DNA of 64,000 nucleotides from Thalia democratica (lineage: Eukaryota), in assembly GCA_965202585.1 (NCBI GenBank), contig OZ241828.1:59520001-59584000 (forward strand), in the 5' to 3' direction. The notes below the pieces were generated by a model. The model saw nothing but the letters and a program-made list of their open reading frames with translations. It ran no database searches and had not been told where the DNA came from. The stretch's first letter is position 1; each line of letters starts with the position of its first letter. Both the position numbers and the translations under genes were made by a program. Positions 20,417 to 52,397 of the stretch are shown here, one piece after another.

Positions 20417-21542
20417 TAGTGATGTACCGGACTCGTTATCCAGGTCCGGATCCGGCCGGATATTGCCATTTTTGTCTGATATCCGGATCCGGCTGGATCT
20501 AAATATGAAAAAAAAAGTCCGGATCCGGTTCCGGCCGGATCCTAATTTGAAAAAAAAAAACCGAATCCGGTTCCGGCCGGATTATAATTAAAAAAAAAAG
20601 TCCGAATCCGGTTCCGGCCGGATTCTGATTTGAAAAAAAAAAGTCTGGATCCGGGTCAGGCCGAATCCTAATTTGAAAAAAAAGTCCGGATCCGGTTCCG
20701 GCCGGATCCTAACAGAGATCCGGTCGATTCGAATCTAGTTAGTAAAAAAGAGCATACAGTAAAGTATTTTTTCAAAAACAAACCCTTTGTAAATTAAAAA
20801 GAGTCATTTTCATCAGTTGAATTTAAACACCTACCATGATTGGCTCATTTTGAACACGTGACTAATTTACATTTGTTTACATATAAACTATGAAATAAAC
20901 ATTTTAGAAATGCAACTCTTTACCTATGTTGTAAAATTAAAAACTTTACTACTAAATTGTAAGGCTAGTTTTAAGATTTTTTGAAAAACTCAGGCTAGAT
21001 CTATATAGGCATAGGTAAAGAGCTTTTAGATTTTGAATGAGTTTAAGCTGATCCGATTTTCAATATTTTGTGATTTTCTAGTTAATTTTGTTCAAGAACT
21101 TGATTTTAATTGATTTTAGATTGGTAAGGCTATAGGGGGGGTCCTCCTTGATTTTCACAAGTTGATCTTATTTAATAAATTTTAATCTTAGCTACCAGAT
21201 ATTGTTTCTGTTATGTACTTTATATTTCTATCAATTTTCTTTATACTAAATATAAAGTTATTCATAGTTTTATTTTAGCTTTTATAGAAATGAAATTTTG
21301 AAACTACAAATGTAAGCACTACTTTTTAAGTGAAAACTAGTGATGTACCGGACTCACTATCCGGATCCAAATCCGGCCGGATATTGCCATTTTTGTCTGA
21401 TACCCGGATCCGGCAGGATATTGCCATTTTTGTCTGATATCCGGTTCCGGCCGGATTCTAGTTTAAAAAAAAATTCCGGATCTGGTTCTGGCCGGATTCT
21501 AATTTATAAAAAAAGTCCGTATCCGGGTCCGGTACATCACTA
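20417..21542. mobile_element. Non-autonomous hAT element, 1126 bp, with CCGGAT-rich subterminal repeats and an internal second left end at 21338
   Basis: TIRs TAGTGATGTACCGGA ... TCCGGTACATCACTA. Perfect 8-bp TSD GTTCAAAC at 20409-20416 and 21543-21550. About 40-bp subterminal repeats at 20500-20710. Confidence 0.88.
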
Positions 21543-25276: not shown

Positions 25277-26412
25277 TAGTGATCTACGGTCATCTTTTGC
25301 TTGGAACCGGAACCTACCGGATCCTATTTTTAAAAAATGATCCGTAACCGGATCCGGCCGGATCCTAGCTGAAATTTGACTGAGTCCCGATCCAGTAAGT
25401 TTGGAAAGACTTTATTTTCAGCAATCAGCTTCTTTCAGTTTTGTATACTTCGATTACTTTGGTTTGAATACTTAATATGTGAAAAATTAGTCAAGTGAAC
25501 CAGTCTAATTAAATTTTAGTTAATCATTTATTGTAAAATTGCAGGTACATACAGTAGTTTATTAAAAAGTTATTAAGTTTTCTTCTTAATGGTTATGATT
25601 ATTATTTAATCTACTTTTGATTAACACTTGAAAATGTTTTAGAGTAGAAAATATTTTTTAGTTTCATTATTATAAGGCTAATTCAGGATAAGTTTATAAA
25701 TTTAAGAACTTTTAAAGTTTCAGAAAATATACATTCTAGATTTTTATTTAAGTAAGACTTAGTGAAATTCAACTTTTTTAGTTAAACTTTTTATAATCAT
25801 ATTTTATGATAGAAACTTGAACTTTAATAATGTCAAAAGTTATAATTAAATATTTTAAAGCATTCAATAAAACTCAAGATGACTCAGTACAGCTTCATTG
25901 GCAAAAACAGTGGCAACGCTGTACAAATCTAAGACTAATAATATTATTTTTAATATAACTAATTTCTAACAGTTACATAGTTTATTTCTCCTTAATTAAA
26001 AATGTCAATTGCGTAGAAACTTTTCAACACAAGTAAGGCATTATGTTATGCCCTTGTTATGCAATTTGCAGTCTTTGGGTTTACAGTTACTCATTAAAAT
26101 ATGTAATGTTTATTCGCACAGTACTTCTTTTTTATTAAAGCATTCGAATTCAAAGCATTAAAGAAAAATTTCAGAGGCTAGAAATCACCACCATCATATA
26201 ATAAAGCAGTTAGAGATAGTTCGTCCCCAACTCTAATACAAAGGAAGCTAACAGCAATAAACCAAACTAGTACTGAGAGTTTAACAATGTAAAGTTATTG
26301 TTGAAAGAATAATTTAACTGAATTATCAGAAACTTCGTTTTCTTCATTTACATGTGACATATGGGCAAATTCAAAAACAATGACATCATATCCTTCTTAA
26401 ACAGCGCATTGG
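25277..26412 (+). pseudogene. Decayed hAT transposase with a TAGTGAT-type left end
   Basis: Starts TAGTGATCTACGG with CCGGATCC repeats like the 20417 element. 26335-26412 translates SFSSFTCDIWANSKTMTSYPS*TAHW, resembling the hAT motif around the first catalytic Asp (F-T-x-D-x-W...S-Y-x-S-L-T-A-H-W), with an in-frame stop. Confidence 0.62.
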
Positions 26413-26539: not shown

Positions 26540-26632
26540 CGTAGTGTACGACTCGATAACCGAAAGGTTCCTTTGTACACCAGGTCGTTAAACCAAACAT
26601 TTTAAGCGCTTCTTTTTTTATTGTTCAATAAA
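26540..26632 (+). repeat. Copy of the dispersed CTCGATAAC structured repeat
   Basis: GTGTACGACTCGATAACCGAAAGGTTCCTTTGTACACCAGGTC...GTTCAATAAAC. Homologous to 48125-48250. Confidence 0.8.
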
Positions 26633-27793
26633 CAATAATAAACTTTAAGAAGTGCTTATTCTTTTAAATAACTTTACAGATAATGGGCTTCTATAAATAA
26701 GTCATAAAATTTTACTTTTTATAACAAAAACTTATAAATGTATTTATTATTAGGCTTAAAAAACATTAGGTGTTTAGTAAACGAGCATACTATTACAATC
26801 TTGCTGTTAAGTGATTCTTCTAATGTTTTTTTGTAATAACGCAATCTGCGAAGAACATTATACAACAAATTGTCCTTCAAGTTTCTTTATAGCAATTCTA
26901 GCCAGCCGACGAGAATAGTTGCCTAGCCTTATTATAAAGAAATTAATTTTTTTACACAGCTCTGTAAACATATTTTCGTTAGTTTAATGACAAATTGTGA
27001 AAAAAGAAAAAAGCAATTGTATTACTTTTAATTCTCTCTTATTTATAAAGGCAACTTCTTCAATAGTAAGCTAATGATACAAATCAATAACTACCTTAAT
27101 AACATTTTTTTAACATATACTTTGTTTTAGAAGTTCTAAAGCTTAAAATTTTTTGTTAATTTCACTCAGGACTTTTTTTACACGAACAAAGCTCATTATA
27201 AACTTAATTTTTAAAGTTTCAAATTGTTATGTTTAATATTTCAGCCAATTTACAGACAACTTGTTGCTGGAGATTAGGTTGGCAAGTTTTCAGTTACCCA
27301 AAAGTTTTAATGAAATATATACATATTTTAAATATCGTACCATTCTAAGCACTCTGATGAATTTTGCGTTTTAACTAAAAAAATATAACATTTAAGTATA
27401 ATAATTAAGTGTTTAAATTATAAATTTAACTTTATTTTCAGTAGGTTTTTAGATTTTGATCTTTATAACATTTTAAAAAACATTAGTTCTGTTAAACCTG
27501 AGAATGACAAACATCAGAATGAAGTTAAGCTGCAGCATTTTTTATAAAACTAGTTGTACCAAAACATTTTAAACAGCTTACATTCAAAATACAATATTAC
27601 TGAAACCGTCTGTAACTAACAGTTTATTTGAATATAAAATTGTACAACAAGAATCTATATAACACTTTAGCAAGAAAGCAAATAAATGAAAACTAAAAGT
27701 ACGTAGACAAAAAAAGTTGATAGTTGTTGAGAAAATCTTAGATAAAAACAACAACTTTGAAAGCATTACAATCTAAAACAAACACACGTATTC

Positions 27794-29908: not shown

Positions 29909-32217
29909 CGTTTCCCTCAAGTTTTTTAGTGGAGAAATTGGATTGAGCTTGTGCTTATATACTTTTTCTAAAAACTTGCTCGCACGCGATCGCGAATTCG
30001 TTAAAAAAACCTCAAAAATATTTTTTTCGGAACAAGTTTCTGTCAAGTCGAATTAGCGATGTCATCGACATTTCTTTAATGCGATGTTATCAGCGAAATT
30101 GCCCGAGGGGTTAGATAATATCAAGGACAGTAGAAGCTTTTTAGTCATGAAAAATTTTTATAGTTGAAGTAGAAACATTTCTTTCTAGTCGAAATAATGC
30201 GATTGCACTAAAGGATGCAAAAATGTAAAGCTTCTACTTGCGAGAAAGTAATTTCAATTAAATTTATGTCACAACTTGTTTTTGAAATTAGCTGCAAAAT
30301 TATATACGGAAGACCGGAAACAAAGCTTTGAATAGAAAAAAAAGTTTTGAATCATAAAATAATGATTGATTATTTTTATTACAAAGCATTTGATTTTCAA
30401 GTTGTATTCTGTGTTTAAAATTATTAATTTTTAAGTTTCTATACTTATTTTGGAGAAAAAAATGATTTTGTTTAAAGTCAATTATTCACGTTATATGTAT
30501 GTTAAAAACAAAAATATAATTTAAAAAGTTATGATTCGAGATAAAAACAAACGTACTAAAAAAATGTTTCCGGCAAAACAAATTTCGAAGTCTTAACCGT
30601 TTATTACTTTTGGATTTTTATGAATTTATTAAGAAGTAATTTATTTTGTAATTTTCTCTTACTATATGCTTTTCTGGTTACAAATTGTATGGGTTTTTGA
30701 TTTATTTACTGGAGTATTGCTTTAGATGCTGGACATAAAATAAAACATTTTAACACTTACCAACGATACTTCTATTTTATTTTCATAAAAACAATGTAGC
30801 TTATACGACACTAATGTTTTAATTTGATACTACAAGTTATAACTTGAAGTTTGATTTATTTGCAAAGTTGTTTTGTATCAATAAAACTTAATGAAACATA
30901 ATGCTTTTTAACACGAAATTACTTAATAAATTTTTGAATAATAAAAAAGAAAAATGTTAACACTATGAAATTAACATTAAACTTATCAAAATGCTTACTC
31001 ACAAAATGATAAATTTGTTGTCAAAAAGTTCAAAAGCTGTAAGTCAGAACAACTCCAAAATAAGTTAATTTATTTTCTCTATAATACATATGTATCTGTT
31101 TTACACAATTACTCCTTCGGTTTAAAAACTTTAAATTAAAAAAAAGCTAGACAGTAGCAAAAACTTTTGAAAATTCCGAATTTGTTATATATTTGATTTT
31201 TTTTAAAGTAGTAAATTGTTTAACTTTGTAAAAAACTCTGTTATTTGTTTACCACTAAAGTTTTGTTATTCTTAAATAATAAAAAAATTCATTTATTTTT
31301 GTTTCAAAAATAATGTTCTTGTTTTAAAAAGCATATAAAATACTTAAACTCTTACTAATTACATTTCTATTTTAACCATTTAAAACTATAATCTACACGA
31401 TATAAATGTTTTTAATGCAATACATGAAATTTTATTTTAAATATTGACTAATTAAAATGGTGGTTAAATGTTAATAAAATTGTACAATGCATACAGATGT
31501 AAACTTGTTTTTCACTATTTTTATACAAACACTTATTTTTTAATATAATTTAATAAACATTTGTCAATTTTTATTGTATTAATTAAAAACTTCTGCATTT
31601 AAGTTAAATTTAGTAGTTTTAGTAAGGTTTTGTATAACACAAAATTATACTTTTTAAATTACATAAGTACTTTTTCGTATAAATTTTCTGCCAAGAACAT
31701 CAAAAACTTTGTGTCAGAAAATTTCAAAAACTATTGAAGTAAATCAAGTTTGTTTTTGCGATTGCAATGTGATTGCAGTAAATCTTGCAAAATTTAAAGC
31801 TTTAAGTACAAGAATAGTTCAATTGGAAATCATTTCTTAGCTGATTTTTTAAGTTAAATGCAAAGTTAGTTGTGCATGACCAAAGAAAGAAACTCAATTA
31901 ATTTTGAAAATAATAACTTTTTTTGTTATCGGTGGACGAACAGGTTAATTGAAAAGTAGAATGTGTTTTAAAATTTTACGAAATTTCACATTTCAAATTA
32001 ATAAGTTTTATGTACTTTAAAATAAACTTGGCTATATAGTATACTAAAGTAAGTTATTTGTTATTAATCATACAAGTTTTCTATTGTTTTGGCTTATTTT
32101 TATAACAACAAAATTTTTGTAAAAACAAAACTCTTTGTTTAAAAACGTTAAAAGTGTATGCAATTTTTCAGTTTAACTTAGATAGTAGTTGATTTTTATA
32201 AAAAATTAATTTGTAGT

Positions 32218-32305
32218 TTATTGACACCACAAAAAATACGCTCAAAATATTTTCGGTTATCGAGTCGTACAACACGGATACCTTTTAATTTCTTGTGTAG
32301 GATAT
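32218..32305 (-). repeat. Internally deleted copy of the CTCGATAAC repeat
   Basis: CGCTCAAAATATTTTCGGTTATCGAGTCGTACA. Lacks the GGTCCTAGGACC palindrome segment. Confidence 0.7.
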
Positions 32306-34334
32306 AAACAATTTCTATATCTTTTTCAGGACAAAGTACTTTTTAAGTACTTAAGACTTTCAAATTTAAACACAACAGAAATTAGTTTTAGTGATATTTT
32401 AAACCGCATTACATACAATTTTTAATGTTAGTTACTTTTGTTAAGTATGTTTGAGTTCTTTTACCTTATTGTTTTATTTTCATTGTAATATTACAAACTA
32501 AAATGCAATCTTTTTACCATATTTTGTGTATATGAAGCTAATAAAAATAAACAATGTATAATTTTACTTTGGGTTTGAAAAAAAATAGTTTTTAGCCATA
32601 TAAGATGAAAAAATCTTCTATAATCAAAACAGTTTACAACTTTTAAGGACTTGTATAAGAATGCAAGTAAAACTTATTTTATTTTCCAATTTTTATGTGT
32701 GGTTTTGCTCTCTTTATTTATTAATATTGATTGAATTGCTACAACAATTATCCACTATACTTTAGTTAAAACTACCCAAAAAATTATTGTGGTATAATTT
32801 TTTTTCAATGCTGTGCTGCTCGTTTTACAGTAAATCTTGATTTATTTAAAAATTGTTTTGTATTAATATAATTTTTTTTATGTAAAAATTAGTATCAAAC
32901 ACAAAAGTATTAATAAGATTTCAATTATATACAATAAACAAAAAGTTTAACAATAGGAAATTAACAATTATTAAGTTTTTATATACTAATGTTAATTCTT
33001 AGTGTAAAAGTAAAACTTAAAATTAAGTACAGTGAAATAATGCAGTAACGTTTCGGTTAAAAATTATATTTTTTAAACTAAGTATATTACAACTTTTTTC
33101 AAGTAGTTTTCTGTTTAATTGTATACTTAGCGAGATTCATGTTCATAAACTATAAAATTAATTGCCAAGAGAATCGAATTCTAATTGTTAAAATTTGAAT
33201 TATAATTAACCTTTACCAAACACATAAACTGTACTTTTGTTTTGTATAGATTAAAAACAATTTTAAACTACAGAAAATAAAACACAATTTTTGAACTAAA
33301 TATAATTTTGACTAACATTTAAAACAAAACATAAAGTATGTTGGTTGTTTTGAAGTTTTTGCTAGATTTATATTAATCTACATTAATAAAATTAGTGTTT
33401 ACAATTTTCATACTCTTAATTGTTATCAATTGAATTTTTTTAATTACAAAGACTAAACAGTACATTATATTCAAAACATATTTATATTGTATATCATATA
33501 TTTATAAATACAAATTTTTATTGTATACCTAAATGCATCGTTACTCAGTGTGTGCATGTATATAAATTTTTCAAAATTTTTACATGTCTCGACCTTTTTT
33601 TTTCTTGAATACTTTTAAATATAAAAACGTTTTAAACAATACGAGAACTTTAAAACATACTAAGTTGCAAACTATTAGTTAAACATAAATCATTCTGAAA
33701 AACTATACAAAAGTCTGTTGTTTTATTTCAATTTTGTCTTTTAAACATAAAAATTGAAATTTTTCTAAATTTAATTATAAAAGTACCATAAAAACCCAAT
33801 AAAAGGTTATTCGGTTTTTATAATGACTAATCAAAAGTTTGTCAAAAATTGTAAATTAAGTGTATCAAATTGCTTTCAGATTAGAAACTCAAATACGAGT
33901 CACAATAAGTTTAAAACTTGATTAAATAAAATACTTTGAAAAAAAATAGTTATGAAATCATGAGTTTTTTTTTTAAGTTATTTTTAACATGTATGATGTG
34001 CTGTATTTAACAATTTAATCATTTTAGTTGTACTTATACTTTTGTAAGGCTTTTAAAACAAACTTTTATTTTATCTTTCCTTAATTTACTTATTGTTATT
34101 AAAATTTTTATAAACTTAAGTGCAAAAAACTTAAACTAAGTTAATCTTAATAAAGTTTACAATGAAGTTTAACATAATTTCTGTGAGTTAAAGTTTGACT
34201 TAAAAGTTCAACTTCAAGAAAAGTTGTATAAAAACTAAAATCCAAATTGTCAAAAATTTCTTTTAAATTAGTTACCTTGGGTATTTCCCTCATACAATAA
34301 CATAGTTTTCATTAGTTAATCATCAATTACATAG

Positions 34335-34455
34335 TTTATAGAAACAAAAATAAAAGCTCAAAATATTCAGCCCTAACACCTTTTGAATGCATGAAGAACC
34401 TTTTAGTTATCGAGTTGTACACCGCTTCGATCCTTTTTAACGCCTTTTTTAGGAC
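34335..34455 (-). repeat. Diverged copy of the CTCGATAAC repeat
   Basis: GAAGAACCTTTTAGTTATCGAGTTGTACACCGCTT ... TTAACGCC...AGGACTA. Confidence 0.7.
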
Positions 34456-36309: not shown

Positions 36310-36605
36310 TTAAGAAAGTAAACATTTTACAAAATTTATCAAAGTTCACTAACAGCATTGATATTTTTTATAGTAATTAGTTTTAAGCTTAATTATAAAA
36401 ATAGATTAATTATAGCATTCTTTTAAAACCATCTGACTAAGTTGTGTTCATATCTGGTTTTTGATCTTATTTTATATAGTTTTTACTAAGCTACAAGATT
36501 CTTTTTACAGATTTTAAAAATTCAAAATAGTTTTTGAGATATAGCCGGTCAAAGTCGGAGCCAACAATAGGTTCCTTATGGGAGGGGCAAAAATAGACTC
36601 TTTTA

Positions 36606-36892
36606 CTAAAAATCTATCTTCTCCTACGTTTTTTGAGATAACTACCTCAAACTTTTAGGAAATGTTCCTTGATATATTTAAAAGATTCAGTTGAAAGGAA
36701 TTTAAAAAAAAATAAAAGATTAAAATTTTATATAAATAAAAAAAAGTTTTTTTTTGTTTTTTTGTTATAAAATTTTTATTTTTTAATTTTTTAAAATTCT
36801 GTTCCAACAGAATTTTCTAAATACTGCAAAGAACATTTCCTGAAAATTTGAGGTAGTTATCTCAAAAAATGTAGGAGGAGATAGATTTTTAG
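36606..36892. mobile_element. Foldback element, arms about 135 bp
   Basis: CTAAAAATCTATCTTCTCCTACGTTTTTTGAGATAACTACCTCAAACTTTTAGGAAATGTTC... is mirrored by ...GAACATTTCCTGAAAATTTGAGGTAGTTATCTCAAAAAATGTAGGAGGAGATAGATTTTTAG. Confidence 0.85.
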
Positions 36893-37344
36893 TGATTTCT
36901 AGTTATTTGCTGTTTTAGTAAATATTTTCTTTTAACATAGTACAAAATTTAGTTGCTTTATTTTACTTAGCAAATAGGTGTTTAATAGCTTACAGCATAG
37001 TTGCCAGGTTTTGATTATTTTAAATTTTGAGAGTTTTTTAAGCTTCTATTGTCCAGCGTTTAGTATTGACAAACTAAGGTTTAAAAAGTAGAAGCTTTGA
37101 GAGACTATATTTAAATAAAATTTTGTATATAAAGGATGTACTTTGAAAAAAAATATGGAAGAAAATTACAAAACAAATTAAGGGCATAAATGGTCCACCT
37201 TGGTTTTTACAAGTTTATCTTATTTTATAGAGTTTTGTCTGAGCTATTATAAGTTTTTCACTGCTTAAAAAAATCAAAGTAACTTTTTAGATATAAGAGA
37301 TCAAAGTTGGTGTGCTCAATAGGTTCCTAATAAAATAAACAAAC

Positions 37345-37692
37345 AAAAAACGCTAAAAAAGACTATTTCATTGAAAATCTATCTTATACTTCATTTTTAA
37401 CCAATCTTCTCCAAATTTTCACTGAACTTCCGTTACTAAAATTTAAATAGATTGAATGCAGGATTTTATTTTATTTATAAAAATAGCAAAATAGATATAT
37501 AAAAATCCACCTACTTTTTTTGTTTTTTATCTATAATTTTAGTATGAGTCATTGTTTATTTTTAAATATTTCTTAATTTGCATCATTCAAAGTCACTATA
37601 AAAAAATGATTTCTGATAGTTTAAAGGTTTCTAGTTTAAAACATGAAGGAGAAGATAGATTTTTAATGAAATAGTCTTTTTTAGCGTTTTTT
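37345..37692. mobile_element. Foldback/MITE related to 36606-36892, with about 60-bp TIRs
   Basis: AAAAAACGCTAAAAAAGACTATTTCATTGAAAATCTATCTT ... AAGATAGATTTTTAATGAAATAGTCTTTTTTAGCGTTTTTTG. Confidence 0.75.
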
Positions 37693-38970
37693 GTATATGT
37701 TTGTATCAGAAACTTTTTACAAAAATTAAATTATCTCAACAACTAAAAAATATTTTTTAATTCTATAAAAACTAGCTTGTAGTATGTAGTTGAAAGCTTT
37801 CATGTAAAAATTTTTTTTTTAATGTTTGATTTTCCCTATGCCCTTAAGCTTATTTTGTTATTGCAAGTTTGGTAAAAGCTTAAGTTAGATTTTCATTAAG
37901 CCTGGGTATCTTGTGTTTAAATTTATTTAAACAAACAAAAAATTGAAATTTTTAGTTCTAACAAATTTAATTTTGAAACCTTGAACTACGAAGGATCATT
38001 ACTTCTGGCTTACATTTAGAGCTTAGAAAAACATTTTTAGAAAAGCAATTTGATATAGCTCAAAAATCATAAAAATCAAGAAATAACATAGAAATTTGTC
38101 TTTTTTGTAAAGTGCTGGGCCAACCTTTAAATTTATATACAATATTTACAAATATATTGGCTTAATGTTTAATAATGAATTCATTATTGTAATTATCTTA
38201 GAAGTTCAAGTGTTTGATATAATTTTCAATGAACTGGTTATCATCTTTTTTTGTCCAGTACAACAGATTGCAGTAGTTTTAGCTTTCATACATGCAGTTT
38301 TGCAACACACTCAGGATAACTCGGGCTAGTTTGATTTTTTTAACAACTCAAGTTAACTCAAGCAAGTTAAGAATTTAAAAAAAAACTCATGATTTAATTT
38401 TCTGGAAATCTTAGGTATAGATCTGAGATCTAGTTTAAGCTTAAATATGTTGATATTTTATAACTAATTTTGTTGATAATCTTGTATTTTATTATTTTTG
38501 TTTTTTATATTTGAAAACACTTAGTACGACTTCAGACAGTTTAAGGTCACAAAAGACAGTTTTTTTACTCAAAAAGTGGTAACCCCAAAAAGTGGTTGTA
38601 TATGATAAAGGAATATAATGACTATGAGTCATTTTTAAACATAAAACTAAAAGTTAGTTTTTAGATCTTAGTTTTTAAATTAAGGTTGCCACACACCAAG
38701 GATACTGAGTTATACTCAAGATAACTAAGAACATTTTTTTTAAACTCATACTGACTCAGGATAACTCAGCCTAGTTTTTTATCTCAGGATAACTCATGCC
38801 AGTTTGTATTTTTTGTAAAAAACTCAAAATAGTTATAATAATTTTGAATATCTTAGTCATTTTTTAGATCTCTAATGAGATTTTGTGGTTTCAGTTTTGA
38901 AATATTTTTGATATTTTAAAATTATATAAGAAACCGCTTGGTTAATGTCATAGCAGTTTTTTGCAACTAT

Positions 38971-41715: not shown

Positions 41716-43380
41716 AACTGCTGTTTGAAGTCTTTTAGTTGGACTCTAATTTAAATTTGTGTTAAAAAATATTTCTGTCTCGAAAAAATCATTACTATTT
41801 TTTCGTTAAACTATATTTTCAATGTCTTTTTTATTTGAGAGAGATTTTTCTGTACTCAAAGTGCTGTAACTTGCTATTTAGTTCCTTTTTCACGTTTTGA
41901 TTATTAAAACTTTTTATTATTAAAAGTTAGCTGAGCACTTATAAATGCCAAGTTATCTGCCTTTTTTTTAATTTAAATTTTTCCAATCACTAAAAGTTAT
42001 AATCATTTTAATTGTACCCATTTCTTCAATGAAGTTTGCATTGTTTTAAAAAGATAGACTTTAGATGCATTTTCTCTATATGTTGTTTTTATACTAAGTG
42101 CTCTTTGTATTTTAATGTTTTAATCAAATAATACTTTTCTGAAATTTAAGCGTTGTGTTCTGTATCAAAAAAATTGCAAAAATTTTATTTTAATTCGGTC
42201 TCATTATTTTGGTATTTTTAGGTACATAAGCTTTTTTTTTTAATTTTGCGTTCATACTAATTTTTTTTAATACCTCCAAAACTCAATGCTAGTTTTATGT
42301 AACTCAGGTTAGTTTTTGGTCACTTAGGCAGACTTTTTTGATTTGAAGAGTTGCAACCCTGTTTATCATCTTTATCTTATATTTATTATATATCTTATAT
42401 TATATGTTGATCTTATATCATCTACATATACTGAATGCATTGAGATTTTTTCAAGTTTAGTTATTAACCCTTACTTTTAAAAAACTAAACATTGAAAAAA
42501 ATTTAATTTGAAATGTAATATTATATTTTATTAAAATGTTCTTTTTTTTGGTAAAGTTGCAAGGGTCTATATATAAAAGTTTCCAAAAAAACTAAATGAA
42601 AATAACATTTTTACTATAAAATTAACCTCACCGTTAATAAATGTTCTATTTTTTAGAACTTTTTGTGCTCACTTTTAAAATACTTTTGTCAAATCGATTA
42701 TCTAAATATACTAGGGTTGTCAAAAAACTATGTTTACATGTAAAGTAACAAAGTTCCAATTAGATACAATAAATCTATCTTAGAATTAATTGTTTTTTTG
42801 TATCACTAATTTTTTTCTTTAAAAGTACCATAAAGTATGTATTTAATGTTTAACTATTTAAGACAGTTTTTTACCTTAAATTTATACTAATAATAAAGCA
42901 AAAAATTTGTTCTTTCAAAAACCTGGAAGAAATTTTCGAAAAGTTATTGGCAAACATGATTGAGGTTAATCTGGAACCAGATAGGAACTTTTTCTAAATC
43001 AAGTTCCGGTCAGAACCGGATTCAAATATAAATTTTAATCAAAATGTGGTTAGATTCATAGGTTAAAAAATATGGCCGGATCCGGTAGAACACCACCTCA
43101 AAACCGTGTAAGCTTGAATATAAAATTTTACAAAATAAAAACTTTTAATGTGTATAGAAAAATAATGTTTTCAATGGAATATTTCCAAAGTGAAAACTGC
43201 GTAAAGTGTTACATGTTCAATTGTTTTAATAATTTAATGAAACTGTTGTAAAATATTTTAGTTAACGTGTTATAAATCTTGTTTAAATTTTCAACAAAGG
43301 TTTTTTTTGTCGTTTTAACATGCTGAGCTAGCTTTTGTTCTACCTATAATAGTAATAAAGTTTAAATATTTAAATAGTTG

Positions 43381-43500
43381 TTTAGTGAACGACAAAAAAC
43401 GCTCGTAAAGTTTGGTCCTAGGACCTGGTGCACGAAGAACCTTTCGGTTATCGAGTCGCACACCGCTTGGATACAGTTTAACGTCTTGTCCAGGACTAAA
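43381..43500 (-). repeat. Best-preserved copy of the CTCGATAAC structured repeat
   Basis: Reverse complement: AGTCCTGGACAAGACGTTAAACTGTATCCAAGCGGTGTGCGACTCGATAACCGAAAGGTTCTTCGTGCACCAGGTCCTAGGACCAAACTTTACGAGCGTTTTTTGTCGTTCA. Confidence 0.85.
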
Positions 43501-44107: not shown

Positions 44108-44235
44108 GTTTATTGAACGACAAAAAAAAATTGCTCAAAATATTTGGTCCTAGGACACGGTGCTCCAAAAATTTTTCGGTTATCGAGTCGCACACCGCTT
44201 AGATACAGTTTAACGTATTGTACAGGACAACAACT
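44108..44235 (-). repeat. Copy of the CTCGATAAC structured repeat
   Basis: TTGGTCCTAGGACACGGTGCTCC...TTTCGGTTATCGAGTCGCACACCGCTTAGATACAGTTTAACG. Confidence 0.85.
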
Positions 44236-44871
44236 ACTTTGAATTTAACATGTTAGTTTTTACATGAATATTTTTATAAATGTGATAAAAATTCTCTGAT
44301 TCTCTAAACAGTAAAGGTAAAACAACTCTTTTATACAATAAATTATAACTCTTTTGTATTAGAATTTATACTTAGTATGGACTATGGAATTTATTAACAA
44401 CATATATCTGTTGAACATTTTTTATTTAATTATTTTCTTTTTTTAATTGTAAAAACTACTTCATTCATTTACACTGTTATAAAAGACTCTTTTATGTACC
44501 TAAATACTTTTCATATCTTGTAACTAATTATGTTTTGGTTTGCTCTACTTTATCTTTGTATTTTGGAAAAAAGCCTGTTTTTTTTAATTGAGCTAGTGTT
44601 AACTTTTAAAATACAAGCCTTTGTTTGCCCCAGTGTAAGTAAAACAAAACTCTAAGTCAAATTTGTTTGACTTATTTTATTTTTAAAACACTTTTTCATT
44701 ACTAGATGTAAGTTCACTTACTCGTTTTTTTTTACTAATAATATTGATTCTTTTTAGTTTCAGCTGAAAAAGCTTTTCATATTTTTTAAAATGTATTTCT
44801 CAGATTTAACTTACAGTCAATCTGAGTGAAACTTGGTTTTATAAAAATTTATAAATTAACAAATCTCAGAT

Positions 44872-45297
44872 GGGTGCACGACTATTCAAATTCGGACAAT
44901 TCAAATTCCGACAATTCAAATTCTTAAAAAAAAAATTGAAAGGGCCACAACTAAAAAAGTAATGTATATTTGTCAAATATAAAAAATACATATGTAAGTC
45001 CTATTAATATCTTCAAGCAATTTTTTTCTTTTTGCAAAACATTGAATACTTTTTGGTATATGGTTTAAATAAAGTAAAAAACATAGTTATTTTTAGTAGT
45101 TTTAAAATATCTTAAAAAGTATTTAAGATTTTGCAAAAAATAAAAAGTGGCTTGTAAATATTAATAAGGTCTACATAAACATTTTTTATTTTTCTCAAAT
45201 TTCAATTATTTTTTGAGATATAGTCTTCTAATTGTTTTTTTTTAAGAATTTGAGTTGTCGGAATTTGAATTGTCCGAATTTGAATTGTCATGTAACC
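44872..45297. mobile_element. Mutator-like (MULE-type) MITE, 426 bp
   Basis: Perfect 9-bp TSD ATCTCAGAT at 44863-44871 and 45298-45306. About 60-bp TIRs starting GG, with internal GACAATTCAAATTC repeats. Confidence 0.85.
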
Positions 45298-48124
45298 ATC
45301 TCAGATTGTTCCTCGTTTACTTTTTAGATTTTATACATAACTGAAAGTTTTGTAAACTGCAACAAATTTCAAAAACTACCTAGTATACAGTTATCACTTA
45401 TAACAGATTTATTATAGAAAAACAAGCTTAAACACTAAAAACTTGTTTAACTTTATTTTAATCTCTTTTTTAAATTATTTAATTTATGTTACTTAACTTT
45501 AGCAATTTCCATTACATAAATAGCTAGAGTTTTATTGTTACAACTTTTTATAATGCATTGCAAGCAGCCTCCTTTTTTTTAGCAACTTCTTTCGAAAATT
45601 AACATTAATTTGTTGTATTATTTTTAGTTGTCAAGGTTTATAAATAGTTTTTCATAAATTGTTAATTCAATAAGAGCGTGATAGTTCTTAATTATTTTTT
45701 TCTGAAAATCCGTATAACAGTAATAAAAGAACCAACTATTTTTCGTGGAAACATTTTTTCATAGCAGTTTGCCTGTCAAGTGTTTTTTATCAGATAGAGA
45801 ATTTTGGTTAATTTGTAGAAATCTCATAAGAATGCTAACTGACTAATATACTACACAGTTAAGTTGAAAATATTTGAATTATGCAAAACCTAACATACTT
45901 TATTTTACGGCAGTTGATTATTAAACCTGAAAAGGTTCCTATTTGCTACAAAACTAGATTCGTGCTTTTAATTTGTTACTTTTTACAAATTACAATAAAC
46001 AAAAAAGTGTTAGTTTCTACTTGTGTTTTTTAATAAAGCAGTAAAGTAGAAATCATTCAAATTCAGCACACTATATATTTTTTCAGTTCGCCTATTTACT
46101 CTATTTATTGTAGTCTTAAAGTTATTCTGCTATTCACAGCTCTAATAAAACATAAATCGCTTCCATTTCATAATAAACTTTACAATACTTTTTTCTTTGG
46201 TACTTATTGTTGAAAACAAATAAGACAGCAAAAATATATCCAAAAAAAATTTTTGTTTTATTAGAAAAAAGAATGTTAACAGAAGCAGTAAAAACAAGTT
46301 TAAGTAAGTTTTAAATTTAAACAGACAAAAAGGTATATTTTGAAAAATACAAACCTTATACACGGTTAGCTTCTATTTAAAAACATTTCATTTCGAACCT
46401 AAATTGTAAAAACTAAGACTTTTGCTTCTATGTTATTCATGCATTTTTTGAAATAATAATTTTACTTTGTAAAGTTATTTTTTGCAAAAAACTTTTACGG
46501 CTTTTATTCAGTTAATTATACTTATTGACACTCTTTTCATAAAAACAAAATCGTAGTTTATTGAAACTTTTAGTTTATAAAATGTACATTCTGTAACTTG
46601 TACGTTAATCAACGTGTATTAACAAGTTTTCCAGATCTTACTTAGTATAGCTTTTAATTTATTTTTTTATTAACTTGAATTTTTATAGAATTTAAATTTT
46701 GTTGTAATTTTTAGTAAATATTAATAAATTTTCTTTAATAGATTTTTATCAAAAGCATAATATTACAATCTAAATTTTTTTATAGTTTTAAATGTAGTAT
46801 GTAAATTTAAATTAAGGCTACACTAGTGCTTTTTTAACCTCATAATATAAATAAAATTAAAGTTTTTTCATAACGGAGTATATTAAAAAGCATCTTTGAT
46901 TATTTATAACTAACCAAAAATATTAAAAAGAATGATTATACGATTTATTTATCTTGCCTAGCTTACATAATGTTACTAAAATACAAAGAAATATTTTTTT
47001 TTACTTTTTTTCAGATTTAAATAAGTATAAAAAATGATAATCATTTAGAATCAACATGTTTGCTATTAATAAACTTCTATAAGTATAAACAAAGTATTTC
47101 TTTTAAAGTTTTAAATAACACTTACACAAATTAATTTAAGTTTGCCTTTAGAAAAACATTGTTTAAGTATTATTTAAAGCAAAAAGATTAGGCATTTATC
47201 CCACTAAGATCTACTTGTTGTATATCAGTCTGTACTATACACTAGGTGTCGACAAACTGTTGCCCATGAAAATATCGGGCCAACGACGTTGTTTATAGCT
47301 TGAAAGCAACTTTGGCAAAATACGCAGGTTTGAGCGGTTTTAGAACAATTACTTACAAATATATCCTAACTCAATTTTTTGTAGGTAGACAGTAATGCTT
47401 ATTAAATATGATTTTTTTACAATTGTTTTTTAGTTCTGTTAGTAGTTCTAAATTGCGCTATGTCGACACACAAACACTTTTTCCAACAAAGCCTTAAAAC
47501 AAAAGTTTTTTCCAGTAAATCTAGCTGGTTACTCGTTAAAGGCCGCGGACCAGAACTATCACTAACAAACATAAAACTATAAAATTTAGAGGACTTTTAC
47601 AGAGTTAAACATTAAAACTTTGAAATCAGTTGTCCAATGCATACTGCTTTAAATAAAAAAAGTTCACTAAACTATACAATAACTAGTCAATATTTATAAT
47701 TATTGCTCACAAAAAAATCTAAAAACACTAACAATGCTTCAATTAGTTGGCGAGTAACTTGAAATAAAAAGAAAGTTTCTAAGTTTTTTGTCGTTTAATC
47801 CACCTTTTGTGATCATTTAAGTAATGTTAACTCTAAATTATACATAACTAAGTAAGTTTTTATAAATATACAAAATACTTTATTTTGTTATTCCACAACT
47901 GATTTTTAAATTACATATGTGTTATATACAATTTATATTACTTGTTGTACGTATGACTTCGAACTGTTAACACTTTTCCTAAAAAGCTTTTGTAACGATA
48001 CTTTTGAAGAACAGATACAATAAAAAAGTTTCTATGAATTATTTAAGTTTGGTTATAACATGAAAAGTAAAAGTTAATCTCAAATTAATGAAGGAAAAAG
48101 TTTTATTAAATTTAATTATTAAAA

Positions 48125-48250
48125 TATAGTGTACTGGACAAGATGTTAAAAGGCATACAAGTGGTGTGCGACTCGATAACCGAAAGGTTTTTTCGTGCAC
48201 CAGGTCCTAGGACCAAATATTTTGAGTATTTATTTTGTTGTTCAATAAAC
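48125..48250 (+). repeat. Copy of the CTCGATAAC structured repeat
   Basis: GGTGTGCGACTCGATAACCGAAAGGTTTTTTCGTGCACCAGGTCCTAGGACCAAATATTTTGAG...GTTCAATAAAC. Confidence 0.85.
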
Positions 48251-51200
48251 ATTAGTATTAATTTGTATAAATGTCAAAAAAAAAAAAAACAAGAAAAAAA
48301 ATTGTGAAAATGATCGTAAACTAGATTCTGATCTTTAAATCGTAAAAATTCAAATAATATTACATAAAATCTTTAAACAGTTTATAGGTTTTAACAATAT
48401 TTGGTTAATTAAAAAGTACATTAGTTCCTAACTATTCGAATCAAGTAATTTGAAATTATATTTTAGAATATCAAAGTCAGATATTTTTCACCAAATAAGA
48501 AACTTTATAAAAAAAATATTTTGTAAGCAAGCAAATCTAAACAAAACCACGGGTACTTTTAACTTCTTATCCAGGACAAATAAATTCTTCAACACTTAGC
48601 ATTCATTTAACTTTCAACTGATTGTCGAAAAGTTGTATTTTTAAAAGCTGCTATAGCGAGCAGTTATAAAACTGTACTTCTAGTACTGCATTGCTTTTAC
48701 ATCGTGTTAAAGAGATTTTAAATGTACACTTTTAATGTTTTTAAGCAATCAAGCGTATATATCTGTTTATAAAAATAAAACTAATTAACTGGTTTGCTTT
48801 TTTCTAATGTGCTTTTGTTCGGGAAACCTTTATTTTTTGTATTTCTCAAAGTTTTCATCTGACTTCCATAAGTCAAGTGTATGAAATTAGGTTGTTGTAC
48901 GAGGAAATGAAATGAAGTTATCTTTGTGCTTCGCTTATAAACTTTAATTTTTTTATGGTTTTTTTTTCTGCTATATGTATTAACTTTTTTTTACCTGTCT
49001 ATTCTTAAATTAAAAGTTGTAAGTTTACTATTTTTTAACTGAACGTACAGAGTTTGAAACATAGTTTTATCTCAAAATAAAAAGTAAAATGATAGGTTGG
49101 TAACGACGCATCTGTTTCTTTCTTTTGATTAGAATTAAAAATGCAAAAAAGAACCTTAATTTAAGCAACAAAAGAGATGTTTAAAGTTTTTTTGAAAAAT
49201 AATAGTTATTGCGATTCAAATTATTAAAATTTTAAAATAACACTTTTTTTTTCGTTTTGTGTATGCGTAACAACATTTATCTCGCCATGTAAATATAAAT
49301 TGTAAAAACATCAATATAAACTTAATATTTCTAAAAAGAAAAAGCTCGCTTAAATTTTTACAAACAGATGATCTTAAAGTATAAAAAGTTACACAATGTA
49401 TTTATAAAAACTTTACAGATTTAAATAAGAATTCTTTTAATTTAAAAAAAAACAATAGATTAACTTAAATCTTAACATAATATGTAAAAGATCTTTAAAA
49501 TGCATAAAGTATATATTACTTTATCACCATATTTCAAGTAACTTTGAAAAAAAAAACATTTTAAGGCCAGGAGAAGAAAAAAAATTCAAGTCATCCTACT
49601 CATATCTATAATGAGTTAAAATTAAAAATATCTTATGTCTGAAGCCAAAAAACATTTTTTTAATGAAAATTTACATACCATCAAGTTCTATATTGTATAA
49701 TTCGTTTTGCATACTTGTAAGTAGCTTAAAGGATTAACAAAGATAAAAAATAAAACAAATTAAAGCCTTATTAATGTCAATAACTAGACAACTTTTAAAA
49801 AGTTTAATTAAAACTATTTTTTTTTTAAATTACTTCTACTTATAAAAATTTACTACAATGACGTTTTTGATATATATATAACATAAAATAAAATTAACGC
49901 TAAGTATAATAGATATAACGGTTCAAAATATAGTTTTAATTGTTTGTTAACAAAAGATCCTAGTGAGGTAACTTCACTGGAATAAAAATAAAAACAAATT
50001 ATACAGTAATCTTCCTTTATTGTACCAACATATGTTTCTGTGTGTCAACGAATCAACACACTTCAACTGGGTTCTGTAAAAAATAATTACTGTAATGAGA
50101 GAATAGAAGCATAGAATAGAATATGTGTATACATATTTTCATTAAAATAAGATATTTTCTACAGATAATAGTTATTAATAGGTAAAATACTTAATATTAA
50201 ATCCGACTGTTATAAAACTATATAATATTTATGATTATTAAGTCTAAAATAAGTAAAGTAAGCTAAATTAAACAACAAAACAACAAATTATAATATAAAC
50301 AAACAACTCACGTTAATGGGAAAGATAACTGATTCAAAATTTATTGTCGTTAACTAATGAAAAATATATATTCATTGCAACTAATAATTACGTCACAATG
50401 TAAACGAGGTTATTTAAACTATTTAATTTGTATTGCAAAGATCATTAATTTAGTTTTTATGTAATCTATTTTGAACAAAAATAAAACATTAACCATTAGA
50501 TAGTTGATCAATAAAATTTAATAAAACTTAACGACGGTGAAGGCAGTAAGAGTCACAGAAACTCGATGTAACATGTATATTATATATTGAATGTTTGTAA
50601 TGATTGAATCAAAGTTATATAGAGTTAGGAAGCAGATTTAGTTCAAATGTAAAAATCAAAATGAAAAAATTAAACTTTAAGAAAAAACCAAAACACAAAA
50701 AAACAAAATTGTTATTAGGCTTACGATGTACTGACCGATAATTAATTTACAGCGACATACATAAAATCATAATGAACTAAATTTAATATATATTTTATTT
50801 TATAATTAATAAAATAATTAATTGGTAAAGTAGGAGTCGGCTGTTTAATTTAAAATATCAATATTACAATAATATAGCTGTAATAATATTACAGATATTT
50901 TAATTAATTAATAAGTAAGTTGTGTTATATATGAAAGTTGAAATGTAAAACAACAAGGTAGTCATATGCTAAGTATAAACCTGCAGTAAAAAACCTACTA
51001 GCTCTCTTGGGCGTAGTAGGTAAAAAAGCACGGTTTATCTGTGATTTGAATACAAGCTTCCAATTAAACTTGGAACTTAACATATAAAGGTGTGAAGAAT
51101 TATGGTCGGAGGGTAAAGTGGATATATGAAATTTCGGAGAATAGAAAGTGACTTGTGTGAAATAGATATAAATTATAAATGAATAAAACTATATTTTACT

Positions 51201-51488: not shown

Positions 51489-52397
51489 TCAGTTATTACT
51501 TATTAAAAAACAAAAAAATCCTCAAATTAATTGGTTCCAGGACTTGGTGTACGAAAAAACTTTCTGTTCCAAAACACATATCCTTTTGTAATAACTTTTT
51601 TTTTTGTATTAATATTACGTTCAATAAGACCTTTTTTCAAGTGAAATCTGTGATAAAAACCTACGATTTCTTACGAATTGCATTCATAGACAATCAATTT
51701 AACGTTATCAAAAAGAAAATTTAGTTTTTTCTTTGGTACAATTTTTAAGTAGAGATCAACCGGGTACATAAAAAGATCATGATAATGGAAGTTCTTTGTA
51801 ATAAAAAAAGCTAAACTACACTAAGATTTTGTTAATAGTTCATTACTTGTCAATAGATTAAAGCTAATAGGTTTAAATCATACTTAAGTAATTTATCTTG
51901 TATGGTTGATTTAAATTTGTTACAAAACATTGAGTTAAGTACCAAAGAATTGGTAACTCTTAAAATTATAAATTACAGCAAAAATTAAATTTTAAGTGTT
52001 TTGAAAAAAAATTGAAGCAAAATGCTTATAACTCAATCATTAATATTCATTTATAAAAGAAAACATATTCCCATAAAATGCTTGTTGCAAACTTACCTTT
52101 TTACTTTTTATTAAACTTTGTCTAACCTCTGTAGTAACAAAAGAAATTAAAAATATTGGAAAACTTTGCAAAATGTTCCCTTACTGTACAAATGTATCTA
52201 AAAGTGTTGGTATATCTGCTCTAGATGGTTTGCTTTAAGGGTTTTTAAAAACATTTTGATTTAATTAATTAGGTTTTAATTTTAGACGCTTTGTTTCACG
52301 AAAAAAAATGGTACTTTTTTCAATTTAAAGGATTATGTTTAGGCCGTTTATCACAAATTCAGAGCATGGTCACATCACCATTTTAACTAGCTTTGAT

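What the first reader, a model, noticed from the sequence alone, without database searches (positions are those of the whole stretch)
43381..43500. Dispersed ~130-bp repeat with a strand-specific RNA fold, GAAA tetraloop and invariant CTCGATAAC core
There are at least six copies (26540+, 32218-, 34335-, 43381-, 44108-, 48125+) and traces at about 51510-51570 and 56777-56800. In one orientation it folds as GGUGUGCGA/UCGUGCACC (9 bp with two G-U pairs that become mismatches on the other strand), enclosing an internal loop and an AACC-GAAA-GGUU hairpin. A GGUCCUAGGACC palindrome, a T-run and AATAAAC follow. The 26540 copy changes both wobble pairs to Watson-Crick (GUGUAC/GUACAC). CTCGATAAC is unchanged in all six copies while flanks drift. 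A Pol III A-box-like TGGACAAGACG lies near the 5' end, but I see no clear B box, consistent TIR or TSD. I cannot assign it to a known class. It may be an unusual SINE or a mobile structured RNA or ribozyme, or the core may be a DNA-binding site (it shares TATCGA with the DREF element).
Basis: partly seen in the sequence, partly recalled or inferred. Interest (0 to 1): 0.75.

Follow-up and report, generated by a model that had tools for sequence, protein, structure and literature searches.

The report
Abundant hairpin-shaped short mobile repeat
This is one copy of an old ~125-base mobile repeat, present tens of thousands of times in a salp-like tunicate genome, that folds into a strand-specific RNA hairpin and most likely spread through an RNA copy as SINEs do; it is an ordinary kind of genome filler with some odd details.

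Summary
The window has seven copies of a ~120-131-bp repeat. The core CTCGATAAC occurs 6 times against 0.1 expected. An 18-base core occurs 3,039 times in the 802-Mb genome, and I estimate 15,000-50,000 copies.

- Ends: the 5' end is sharp (GTCCTGGAC...). The 3' end is ...GTCGTTCAATAAAC followed by a short, variable TAA-like tail.
- Flanks are unique, with no target-site duplication of any length tested.
- Truncation is at the 5' end only.
- The last ~100 nt are shared with a longer (475 nt or more) non-coding family.
- The sense strand folds far better as RNA than the antisense (-35.1 vs -25.7 kcal/mol; z -2.9 vs -0.8), owing to six G-U pairs. Subfamilies changed stem bases only in ways that keep sense-strand pairing.
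- Individual copies decay neutrally, with no covariation beyond shuffles.
- No Rfam family, tRNA or ribozyme matches. The best A-box-like motif is lost in a subfamily that still amplified.

Best reading (about 0.5): a non-autonomous retroposon that works like a LINE-tail SINE. It lacks two defining SINE features, a Pol III head and target-site duplications, and no partner LINE was found.

First-stage notes on three other windows describe what is probably the same family. No RNA data were available.

The parts
43380..43496 (-). Full-length copy (the finding), sense strand = window minus strand, about 90% identical to the family consensus
43488..43496 (-). 5' terminal GTCCTGGAC. It can pair with the internal GTCCTAGGAC (9 bp, one bulge), and the family's sharp 5' end lies here
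43456..43464 (-). 5' arm of the main stem, GGTGTGCGA
43447..43455 (-). Core CTCGATAAC (internal loop), the best-conserved 9-nt window of the family
43440..43447 (-). CCGAAAGG: apical mini-hairpin with a GAAA tetraloop
43427..43435 (-). 3' arm of the main stem, TCGTGCACC (two G-U pairs with the 5' arm)
43414..43425 (-). Palindrome GGTCCTAGGACC: a small hairpin, or the partner of the 5' terminus
43394..43399 (-). T-run (6 here, 7-8 in the consensus). It closes the long imperfect palindrome that spans element positions 10-101
43380..43393 (-). Conserved 3' end GTCGTTCACTAAAC (consensus GTCGTTCAATAAAC), followed by an A/T-rich TAA-like tail
44108..44228 (-). Full-length copy, 87% identical to the consensus
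48131..48264 (+). Full-length copy, 90% identical to the consensus.
34326..34455 (-). Older full-length copy, 77% identical to the consensus
26541..26641 (+). Copy of the older or sister type (GTGTAC/GTACAC stem), lacking the first ~30 nt
32203..32302 (-). Copy with an internal deletion of element positions ~56-83
51500..51568 (-). Old 5'-truncated copy (element positions 48-117, 79%)

Best explanation
The repeat is a copy of an old, very abundant, non-autonomous mobile element that spread through an RNA intermediate, in the way LINE-dependent SINEs do.

The working part is the 3' ~100 nt. It consists of a long imperfect hairpin topped by a GAAA tetraloop with the CUCGAUAAC internal loop, a small GGUCCUAGGACC hairpin, a U-run, GUCGUUCAAUAAAC and a short (UAA)n-like end.

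Inferred steps: this module is the handle by which a reverse transcriptase of the 'stringent' type recognises the RNA. The TAA-like repeats prime or slip on an A/T-rich nicked target. Copying runs to the fixed 5' end (GUCCUGGAC) or stops early, which gives 5'-truncated copies.

Shown: copy number, sharp 5' end, one-sided variable tail, absence of target-site duplications, truncation at the 5' end only, a 3' module shared between two families with different 5' parts, a sense-strand-specific fold, and neutral decay of inserted copies.

Not shown: any transcript, the polymerase that makes it, how the 5' end is defined, and the autonomous partner.
For: Abundance and dispersal:
- More than 3,576 first-look candidates in the genome.
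- 3,039 exact 18-mer cores against 0 for the reversed control.
- 11 copies in 180 kb of arbitrarily chosen DNA and 7 in the window.
- Flanks are unique apart from three segmental duplicates.

Ends:
- The 5' boundary is sharp in 35 aligned copies.
- 35% of copies have a TAA dimer within 14 nt after AATAAAC, against 2.3% in other flank windows and roughly 2 of 40 in the last ~20 nt upstream by eye. A+T is 85% in the first 15 nt downstream against 75% further out.
- Truncation: among about 25 unselected copies, 6 lack the 5' part (starts at 28, 28, 31, 33, 48 and 71/73), and none lacks the 3' end except one cut off by the end of its locus.

Shared 3' module:
- The L036 copy belongs to a family of 475 nt or more (2,000-3,000 candidates). 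It shares only the last ~100 nt with this repeat and ends the same way.

RNA-type structure:
- Sense -35.1 kcal/mol (z -2.9) against antisense -25.7 (z -0.8). The sense strand is more stable in 37 of 39 copies.
- There are six G-U pairs in the sense fold and two in the antisense.
- With DNA parameters the two strands fold equally, -18.1 each.
- The subfamily series in the stem, A38/A66 to A38/G66 to G38/G66, keeps pairing at each step on the sense strand only.

From the literature (PMC3747384): a conserved stem-loop in the 3' end is usual for LINE/SINE pairs of the stringent type, the I element ends in TAA repeats, and UnaL2 ends in TGTAA repeats. PMC10686999 reports I, RTE-BovB and L2 as the low-divergence, highly transcribed LINE subfamilies in Salpa thompsoni.
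Against: - No target-site duplication. True upstream/downstream pairs match no better than mismatched pairs for k = 6-12, and no fixed 2-5-bp duplication appears at any boundary offset.
- No head derived from tRNA, 5S, 7SL or snRNA.
- The only good A-box-like motif is destroyed in a subfamily that still amplified (9 of 45 copies).
- A conserved run of 7-8 T on the sense strand would stop RNA polymerase III before the conserved 3' end.
- No RT-coding partner with this 3' end was found. The longer sister family has no ORF.
- The element is also a DNA-level near-palindrome, so a DNA mechanism is not excluded.
- No RNA data exist for this organism in the runs offered.
- The G-U asymmetry of 6 to 2 is suggestive, not significant.
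Confidence: 0.5

Rival explanations
1. It is a DNA-level mobile foldback element. A single-stranded or cruciform hairpin is recognised by a transposase, for example a rolling-circle (Helitron/Helentron-like) enzyme or an unknown one, and is inserted without duplicating the target.
For: - No target-site duplication at any length tested.
- Element positions 10-103 form a long imperfect palindrome that folds equally well as DNA on both strands (-18.1 kcal/mol, z about -2.4).
- The 5' terminal GTCCTGGAC is complementary to a subterminal GTCCTAGGAC about 40 nt from the 3' end, like the asymmetric terminal inverted repeats recalled for Helentrons (recalled from memory).
- Both junctions are somewhat A/T-enriched.
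- Families share the 3' end but differ at the 5' end.
Against: - The termini are not TC...CTRR, and the flanking bases show no A|T or T|T rule.
- The hairpins lie 35 nt or more from the 3' end, not about 10.
- The 3' end is fuzzy, with a one-sided TAA-like tail (35% against about 2-5% upstream).
- Truncation is at the 5' end only.
- The six G-U pairs favour one RNA strand.
- There are no terminal inverted repeats as in MITEs.
Confidence: 0.2
2. It is a dispersed family of small RNA genes. RNA polymerase III would start near position 10-13 and stop at the T-run, giving a ~90-nt hairpin RNA with a U tail, possibly processed further (small-RNA precursor or self-processing RNA). Dispersal would then be secondary.
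For: - The long hairpin (positions 10-101) ends exactly at the T-run.
- An A-box-like TATCCAAGTGG (1 mismatch) lies at 24-34. A weak B-box-like GGTCCTAGGAC lies 48 nt downstream, which is tRNA-gene-like spacing.
- The sense strand is strongly structured (z -3.35 for positions 10-104).
- The 5' G1 helix plus the AAGACG/CGUCUU pairing has the strand order of an HDV-like double pseudoknot (from the sequence).
Against: - Tens of thousands of neutrally decaying copies, with a median of ~84% identity to the consensus and no covariation, are not a gene family.
- The 20 nt after the T-run and the first 9 nt are conserved as part of the unit.
- The A-box-like motif is lost in an amplifying subfamily and absent from the sister family.
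- The B-box match has 3 mismatches.
- No Rfam family matches, including all ribozyme and tRNA models, at E up to 10.
- The HDV-like core (3-bp P3 with a short L3, catalytic C in J4/2) and the hammerhead core (CUGANGA...GAAA) are absent from the sequence.
Confidence: 0.1
3. The conserved core is a protein-binding DNA site (DREF/BEAF-like or insulator) kept by selection in the host, and the repeat matters mainly as a carrier of that site.
For: The core is the best-conserved 9-nt window in unselected copies (0.92 vs 0.81). Its reverse complement contains TATCGA.
Against: - The match to the DRE octamer TATCGATA (recalled from memory) is only 6 of 8.
- The core is equally fixed in the sister family and in all subfamilies, so the excess is explained by constraint on the source elements plus subfamily differences elsewhere.
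- The excess is modest, from only 15 copies, which were detected by similarity.
- Copies otherwise decay neutrally.
Confidence: 0.03

Closest known systems
SINEs with a LINE-derived, 'stringent-type' 3' tail (e.g. UnaSINE1/UnaL2; tortoise Pol III/SINE with CR1)
   Same: Short, non-coding and very abundant. A conserved 3' stem-loop module is followed by short terminal repeats. The module is shared by families with different 5' parts, and truncation is at the 5' end only (PMC3747384).
   Different: There is no tRNA/5S/7SL-type head, and a T7-8 run lies inside the unit. There are no target-site duplications, and no RT-coding partner has been found.
I-clade LINEs (I element), whose 3' ends are TAA repeats
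   Same: The variable end is TAA-like (PMC3747384). I-type LINEs are reported as low-divergence and highly transcribed in Salpa thompsoni (PMC10686999).
   Different: The tail here has only 2-4 units and is degenerate. I elements make target-site duplications (recalled from memory), and none is seen here.
T+ SINEs of mammals (B2 and relatives) that carry AATAAA signals and a Pol III terminator in the tail (recalled from memory, not tested)
   Same: A T-run and AATAAA both lie in the 3' region of a short retroposon.
   Different: The order is reversed (T-run before AATAAA), there is no poly(A) tail, and no tRNA-like head.
MITEs / foldback elements
   Same: Short and abundant, and near-palindromic over most of its length.
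   Different: The palindrome stops short of both termini. There are no terminal inverted repeats and no target-site duplication, and the tail is one-sided.
Non-autonomous Helitrons/Helentrons (e.g. DINE-1/HINE)
   Same: No target-site duplication, hairpins, A/T-rich targets, and a 5' terminus complementary to a subterminal 3' sequence.
   Different: There is no TC/CTRR and no A|T or T|T insertion rule. The hairpins are far from the 3' end, and the 3' boundary is fuzzy.
HDV-like ribozymes at the 5' ends of retroelements (R2, RTE, L1Tc)
   Same: The sharp 5' end begins with G, in a helix that pairs ~70 nt downstream. The AAGACG/CGUCUU pairing gives the same strand order as P1/P2.
   Different: The stem in the P3 position has 9 bp and a 20-nt loop instead of 3 bp with a short L3. 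There is no C in the J4/2 position, and no Rfam hit.

Membership tests
SINE (LINE-dependent retroposon) | Short, non-coding, high-copy, dispersed with unique flanks | tested here: met
   About 120-131 bp. There are 3,039 exact cores and an estimated 15,000-50,000 copies. Flanks are unique.
SINE (LINE-dependent retroposon) | 5' head derived from tRNA, 7SL, 5S or snRNA with an internal Pol III promoter | tested here: not met
   ARAGORN finds no tRNA in the window or in 44 loci. Rfam gives no hit at E up to 10. The A-box-like motif has 1 mismatch but is lost in an amplifying subfamily, and the B box has 3 mismatches. A T7-8 run lies inside the unit.
SINE (LINE-dependent retroposon) | 3' end of simple repeats or poly(A), variable between copies | tested here: met
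   A TAA dimer is present in 35% of copies within 14 nt of the end against 2.3% elsewhere, and its register varies.
SINE (LINE-dependent retroposon) | 3' region shared with an autonomous LINE partner | tested here: inconclusive
   The module is shared with a longer non-coding family. No RT ORF was found among the ten longest ORFs outside a tandem array, out of 30 ORFs of 130 aa or more in the 337 kb held.
SINE (LINE-dependent retroposon) | Target-site duplications flanking each copy | tested here: not met
   Real flank pairs match no better than mismatched pairs for k = 6-12. No fixed 2-5-bp duplication was found.
SINE (LINE-dependent retroposon) | Transcript of the whole unit | not testable with these tools
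MITE | Terminal inverted repeats at the extreme ends plus a fixed-length target-site duplication | tested here: not met
   The ends GTCCTGGAC... and ...GTTCAATAAAC are not inverted copies of each other, and there is no duplication.
Helitron / Helentron | 5' TC and 3' CTRR termini, a hairpin ~10 nt from the 3' end, insertion at A|T (or T|T) | tested here: not met
   The termini read from 35 copies do not fit. The flanking bases are A or T at background rates.
Hammerhead ribozyme | CUGANGA and GAAA cores around a three-way junction | tested here: not met
   There is no CUGANGA in the consensus (one search shows the sequence), and no Rfam hammerhead hit at E up to 10.
HDV-like ribozyme | Nested double pseudoknot with a 3-bp P3, short L3, P1.1 and a catalytic C in J4/2 | tested here: not met
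   The P1/P2-like strand order is present. The stem in the P3 position has 9 bp with a 20-nt loop, and the J4/2 position reads UGAG without a C. There is no Rfam hit. Cleavage itself is not testable here.
tRNA or other known small RNA (Rfam) | Score at or above the family's gathering threshold | tested here: not met
   There are no hits at gathering score in the 64-kb window. At E up to 10 on the element, only a chance miRNA hit appears on the other strand.

The most novel reading that the evidence does not exclude
The unit is a self-contained mobile structured RNA whose fold does more than recruit a reverse transcriptase. The 5' G1 helix with its pseudoknot-like partner would define the RNA's own 5' end by self-cleavage or by a structure-specific host nuclease, letting a promoter-less element ride in host transcripts. 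Alternatively, the hairpin that ends at the T-run is a Pol III small-RNA precursor. A similar loop inside a different stem in an unrelated ORF-poor metagenome contig (L050) would then point to a wider, undescribed RNA motif.
Probability: 0.07. Interest if true: 0.7.

Novelty: new variant of a known kind. Interest (0 to 1): 0.3.

Why it matters
Salp genomes are reported as about 80% repeats, many of them unclassified (PMC10686999). This family alone may account for roughly 0.3-0.7% of the genome. Together with its longer sister family it defines a 3' RNA module that some still unidentified reverse transcriptase probably recognises. Naming the family and its module would improve repeat masking and gene annotation in pelagic tunicates. 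It would also give a handle for finding the partner element. The combination of a sharp 5' end, no recognisable promoter and no target-site duplication is a small open puzzle about how such elements are transcribed and inserted. Otherwise this is ordinary genome filler, old and decaying neutrally.

Tried and rejected
1. Rfam: at gathering score on the whole window, and at E up to 10 on the element, on the L036 family and on L050/L062, nothing relevant was found.
2. tRNA search of the window and 44 loci found none.
3. Target-site duplication searches found nothing: exact k-mers, best-match statistics against mismatched pairs, and fixed short duplications at all boundary offsets.
4. A search for empty sites through repeated flanks in the 337 kb held turned up only three segmental duplicates that all contain the element.
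5. Covariation was counted on 45 copies for 23 pairs. It is not above shuffles (118/500, 93/500, 259/500), as expected for neutrally decaying copies.
6. Partner LINE: Pfam was run on ten of the 30 ORFs of 130 aa or more in the held DNA. They were host genes (Kelch/BACK, CUB), one with a baculovirus FP-type domain, or had no hit. None was a reverse transcriptase. Shorter ORFs were only eyeballed.
7. The apparent 'family B' in L044, sharing only the tail, turned out to be one 5'-truncated copy inside a local inverted duplication, not a family.
8. A metagenome scan for the 18-mer core gave 33 hits. Nearly all are chance matches in unrelated, mostly GC-rich contigs. Only L050/L062 is curious, and it is only modestly better than the other hits.
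9. The paper search for the core sequence found nothing relevant, and the salp genome papers give only class-level repeat tables.
10. The look-up of sequencing runs listed no RNA run.
After that, no letters of 48262-48311 went to any pattern, genome, paper or findings search. The copy there was trimmed to 48131-48255 for alignment. Local scripts did read the whole window file, and one search's script printed that copy's downstream flank, which lies in that stretch.
I did not try to obtain more letters another way, so the sister family could not be extended and LINE 3' ends could not be inspected.

Full report
WHAT IS THERE

The window is A/T-rich animal DNA (22-30% G+C). It comes from an 802-Mb assembly with nine chromosome-sized pieces. 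Earlier notes of this scan call the organism a pelagic tunicate, probably a salp. I did not verify that myself. One small-share holder of the stretch among the listed runs is a marine metagenome.

A consensus built from 35 genomic copies finds seven copies in the window. Four are full-length: 43375-43496 -, 44108-44228 -, 48131-48264 + and 34326-34455 -. One has an internal deletion (32203-32302 -). One lacks the first ~30 nt (26541-26641 +). One is old and lacks the first 47 nt (51500-51568 -). The 'trace' at 56777-56800 is only an 8-mer in the wrong arrangement.

FAMILY ANATOMY

- In 35 aligned copies the 5' boundary is sharp at GTCCTGGACAAGACG.
- The 3' side ends in TTTTTTTGTCGTTCAATAAAC and then becomes variable.
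- The flanks are unique, apart from three segmental duplications that each contain the element.
- The 18-base core occurs 3,039 times in the genome, 1,464 on one strand and 1,575 on the other. The reversed control occurs 0 times.
- In 180 kb taken at round coordinates there are 11 copies, one of them with the exact core. This gives a rough 15,000-50,000 copies. The window itself is about three times richer than average.
- Unselected full copies are 66-90% identical to the consensus, with a median near 84%. The family is therefore old.

ENDS AND FLANKS

After AATAAAC, 35% of copies have a TAA dimer within 14 nt. The figure is 2.3% in other flank windows. In the last ~20 nt upstream it is roughly 2 of 40, judged by eye from the listing. 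A+T is 85% in the first 15 nt downstream against 75% further out. The register of the tail varies between copies (C-TAATAA, C-AATAAT, C-TATAATAAT).

There is no target-site duplication. True upstream/downstream pairs score no better than mismatched pairs for words of 6-12. No fixed 2-5-bp duplication appears at any of 480 combinations of word length and boundary offsets.

Among about 25 copies not selected for quality, six lack the 5' part. None lacks the 3' end except one that is cut off by the end of its locus.

A SISTER FAMILY WITH THE SAME 3' MODULE

Three copies (window 26541, L036, L048) looked like a short subfamily starting near position 28. A genome search with the L036 copy plus its upstream flank changed that picture. 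About 40 of 40 scored hits (2,000-3,000 candidates) continue upstream for at least 475 nt, and for about 560 nt in other copies. This longer family is A/T-rich, with no ORF, no tRNA and no Rfam match. It shares only its last ~100 nt with the short repeat, at roughly 80% identity, and it ends in the same AATAAAC-AAT(A). Some of its copies start about 50 nt further in, at higher identity.

The 3' module is therefore the common, constrained part, and the 5' parts differ. That is the pattern of elements sharing a recognition tail, not of transposons sharing both termini. An apparent third family in L044 proved to be a single 5'-truncated copy caught in a local inverted duplication.

STRUCTURE

As RNA, the consensus sense strand folds at -35.1 kcal/mol (z -2.9, 0 of 300 shuffles). 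The antisense folds at -25.7 (z -0.8). For positions 10-104 the values are -29.9 (z -3.35) and -17.0 (z -0.14). The sense strand is the more stable in 37 of 39 copies (the window copy alone).

The asymmetry comes from six G-U pairs in the sense fold against two in the antisense. With DNA parameters both strands give -18.1 kcal/mol. The unit is thus also a long imperfect palindrome, spanning positions 10-103 and ending at the T-run. What is strand-specific is the wobble pairing.

Two architectures compete:
- a closing helix between the 5' terminal GUCCUGGAC and the internal GUCCUAGGAC;
- a long panhandle in which AAGACGUU pairs with the stretch just before and into the U-run.

The main 9-bp stem, the CUCGAUAA internal loop and the ACC-GAAA-GGU cap are common to both.

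The stem differs between lineages in an ordered way. The sister family and the oldest short copies have GUGUAC/GUACAC, all Watson-Crick. An intermediate group has A38 with G66. The main group has G38 and G66, which gives two adjacent G-U pairs. A third difference, C63 to U, also gives a wobble pair. Every step keeps pairing on the sense strand only. This is consistent with selection on the RNA of the source elements, but it rests on three one-sided changes, so it is weak as statistics.

Among the inserted copies there is no covariation beyond shuffled controls. That is what neutral decay of dead copies predicts.

THE 'INVARIANT' CORE

CTCGATAAC is the best-conserved 9-nt window in 15 unselected full copies (0.92 against 0.81 overall, rank 1 of 114). 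It is the same in all subfamilies and nearly the same in the sister family, whereas other segments carry subfamily-specific differences. I read this as constraint on the source elements, probably a contact in the internal loop, and not as selection on the genomic copies. The DREF idea rests on six shared bases only.

WHAT IT IS NOT

- No Rfam family reaches threshold in the window. At E up to 10 the element gives only a chance miRNA hit on the other strand.
- It is not a tRNA.
- The hammerhead core is absent.
- The 5' G1 helix and the AAGACG/CGUCUU pairing do have the strand order of an HDV-like double pseudoknot, which would neatly explain a sharp 5' end in a promoter-less element. However, the stem in the P3 position has 9 bp with a 20-nt loop instead of 3 bp with a short loop, and the J4/2 position has no C. 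The defining core is not there.
A better one (TATCCAAGTGG, one mismatch) lies at positions 24-34 with a weak B-box-like match 48 nt downstream. A two-base deletion destroys it in a subfamily that still amplified (9 of 45 copies), and the sister family lacks it. Chance alone would give such a match in a few per cent of sequences of this length (my estimate).
- The termini fit neither MITEs (no terminal inverted repeats, no duplication) nor Helitrons (no TC/CTRR, no A|T rule).

MOST LIKELY MECHANISM

The evidence consists of:
- a one-sided, variable TAA-like tail;
- truncation at the 5' end only;
- a structured 3' module shared by families with different 5' parts;
- a fold that is better on one RNA strand.

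Taken together, these point to propagation through RNA by target-primed reverse transcription. The module would serve as the handle for a 'stringent-type' reverse transcriptase, and the TAA repeats as the priming or slippage end. The review PMC3747384 states that such stem-loops are usual in stringent LINE/SINE tails, that the I element ends in TAA repeats and that UnaL2 ends in TGTAA repeats. PMC10686999 lists I, RTE-BovB and L2 as the low-divergence, highly transcribed LINE subfamilies in Salpa thompsoni.

Three things are against calling it a SINE proper. Two defining features were tested and not met (a Pol III head and target-site duplications). The internal T7-8 run argues against Pol III transcription of the whole unit. 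No coding partner was found. I therefore say that it works like a LINE-tail SINE, with confidence about 0.5, and I do not file it as a member.

The main rival is a DNA-level foldback element inserted without duplication (0.2). A Pol III hairpin-RNA gene family or self-processing RNA comes next (0.1). A host binding site as the primary function is unlikely (0.03).

LIMITS

- No RNA run holds the stretch.
The sister family could not be extended, LINE 3' ends could not be read, and I did not try to get letters another way.
- The metagenome scan for the core returned chance hits. One curiosity is an ORF-poor, 41% G+C contig (L050, identical to L062). In it a different 9-bp stem encloses the same 20-nt loop, followed by a small hairpin, a T-rich run and AATAAG. 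It is only modestly better than the other chance hits, and I rate real kinship at perhaps one in three.

NOVELTY AND SCORE

The salp genome papers give only class-level repeat tables, with many repeats unclassified. I found no description of this family, but I could not consult Dfam or Repbase. First-stage notes of this scan on three other windows describe a ~120-150-nt structured SINE-like repeat that is probably the same family. I did not check them.

This is a new variant of a known kind: an old, neutrally decaying, non-autonomous repeat with a well-defined RNA-type 3' module and some unexplained features (sharp 5' end without a promoter, no duplication). Interest 0.3.

Noticed in passing
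L036:6518-6993 (minus strand): A longer A/T-rich, ORF-less repeat family of 475 nt or more, ~560 nt in other copies, with 2,000-3,000 candidates. It shares only its last ~100 nt with the short repeat, and some copies start ~50 nt further in. It may be the 3' part of something longer.
   Followed up: partly
L050:1745-1850 (identical in L062): An ORF-poor, 41% G+C metagenome contig in which a different 9-bp stem (CUGGGACAC/GUGUCCCGG) encloses the same 20-nt loop GACTCGATAACCGAAAGGTT. A small hairpin, a T-rich run and AATAAG follow. This is either a distant relative or chance.
   Followed up: partly
L044:757-858 and 1122-1223: An inverted duplication (81% identity, ~260-bp spacer) whose arms each carry a 5'-truncated copy (tail only) plus 54 nt of unique flank.
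   Followed up: yes
window 8613-9700: About 50 tandem copies of a 21-bp unit, 94-96% alike in the middle of the array. It gives open frames of 260-340 codons on both strands.
   Followed up: no
window 20403-21555 and 25305-25380: G+C-rich ~42-bp tandem units built on CCGGATCCGG-type palindromes, each followed by an A-run. They form islands in 25% G+C DNA.
   Followed up: no
window 36605-36893; 44862-45307; 37343-37694: Three foldback or MITE-like structures. The first has 141-nt arms with a 7-nt spacer. The second has 73-nt terminal inverted repeats (92%) around 300 bp and lies between two copies of the repeat. The third has 56-nt inverted repeats (93%) around 240 bp.
   Followed up: no
G000:C1, first 45 Mb (coordinates only): Exact-core copies are unevenly spread: 13 in 0-10 Mb against about 29 in 30-40 Mb and 26 in 40-45 Mb. 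The window itself is about three times richer in copies than the arbitrary sample.
   Followed up: no
L030:600-900: One copy sits between two direct repeats of a ~25-bp GTTACCCC...CTTACCCTTGG motif that also occurs next to other copies (L009, L010/L011). This is probably the end of another repeat family.
   Followed up: no
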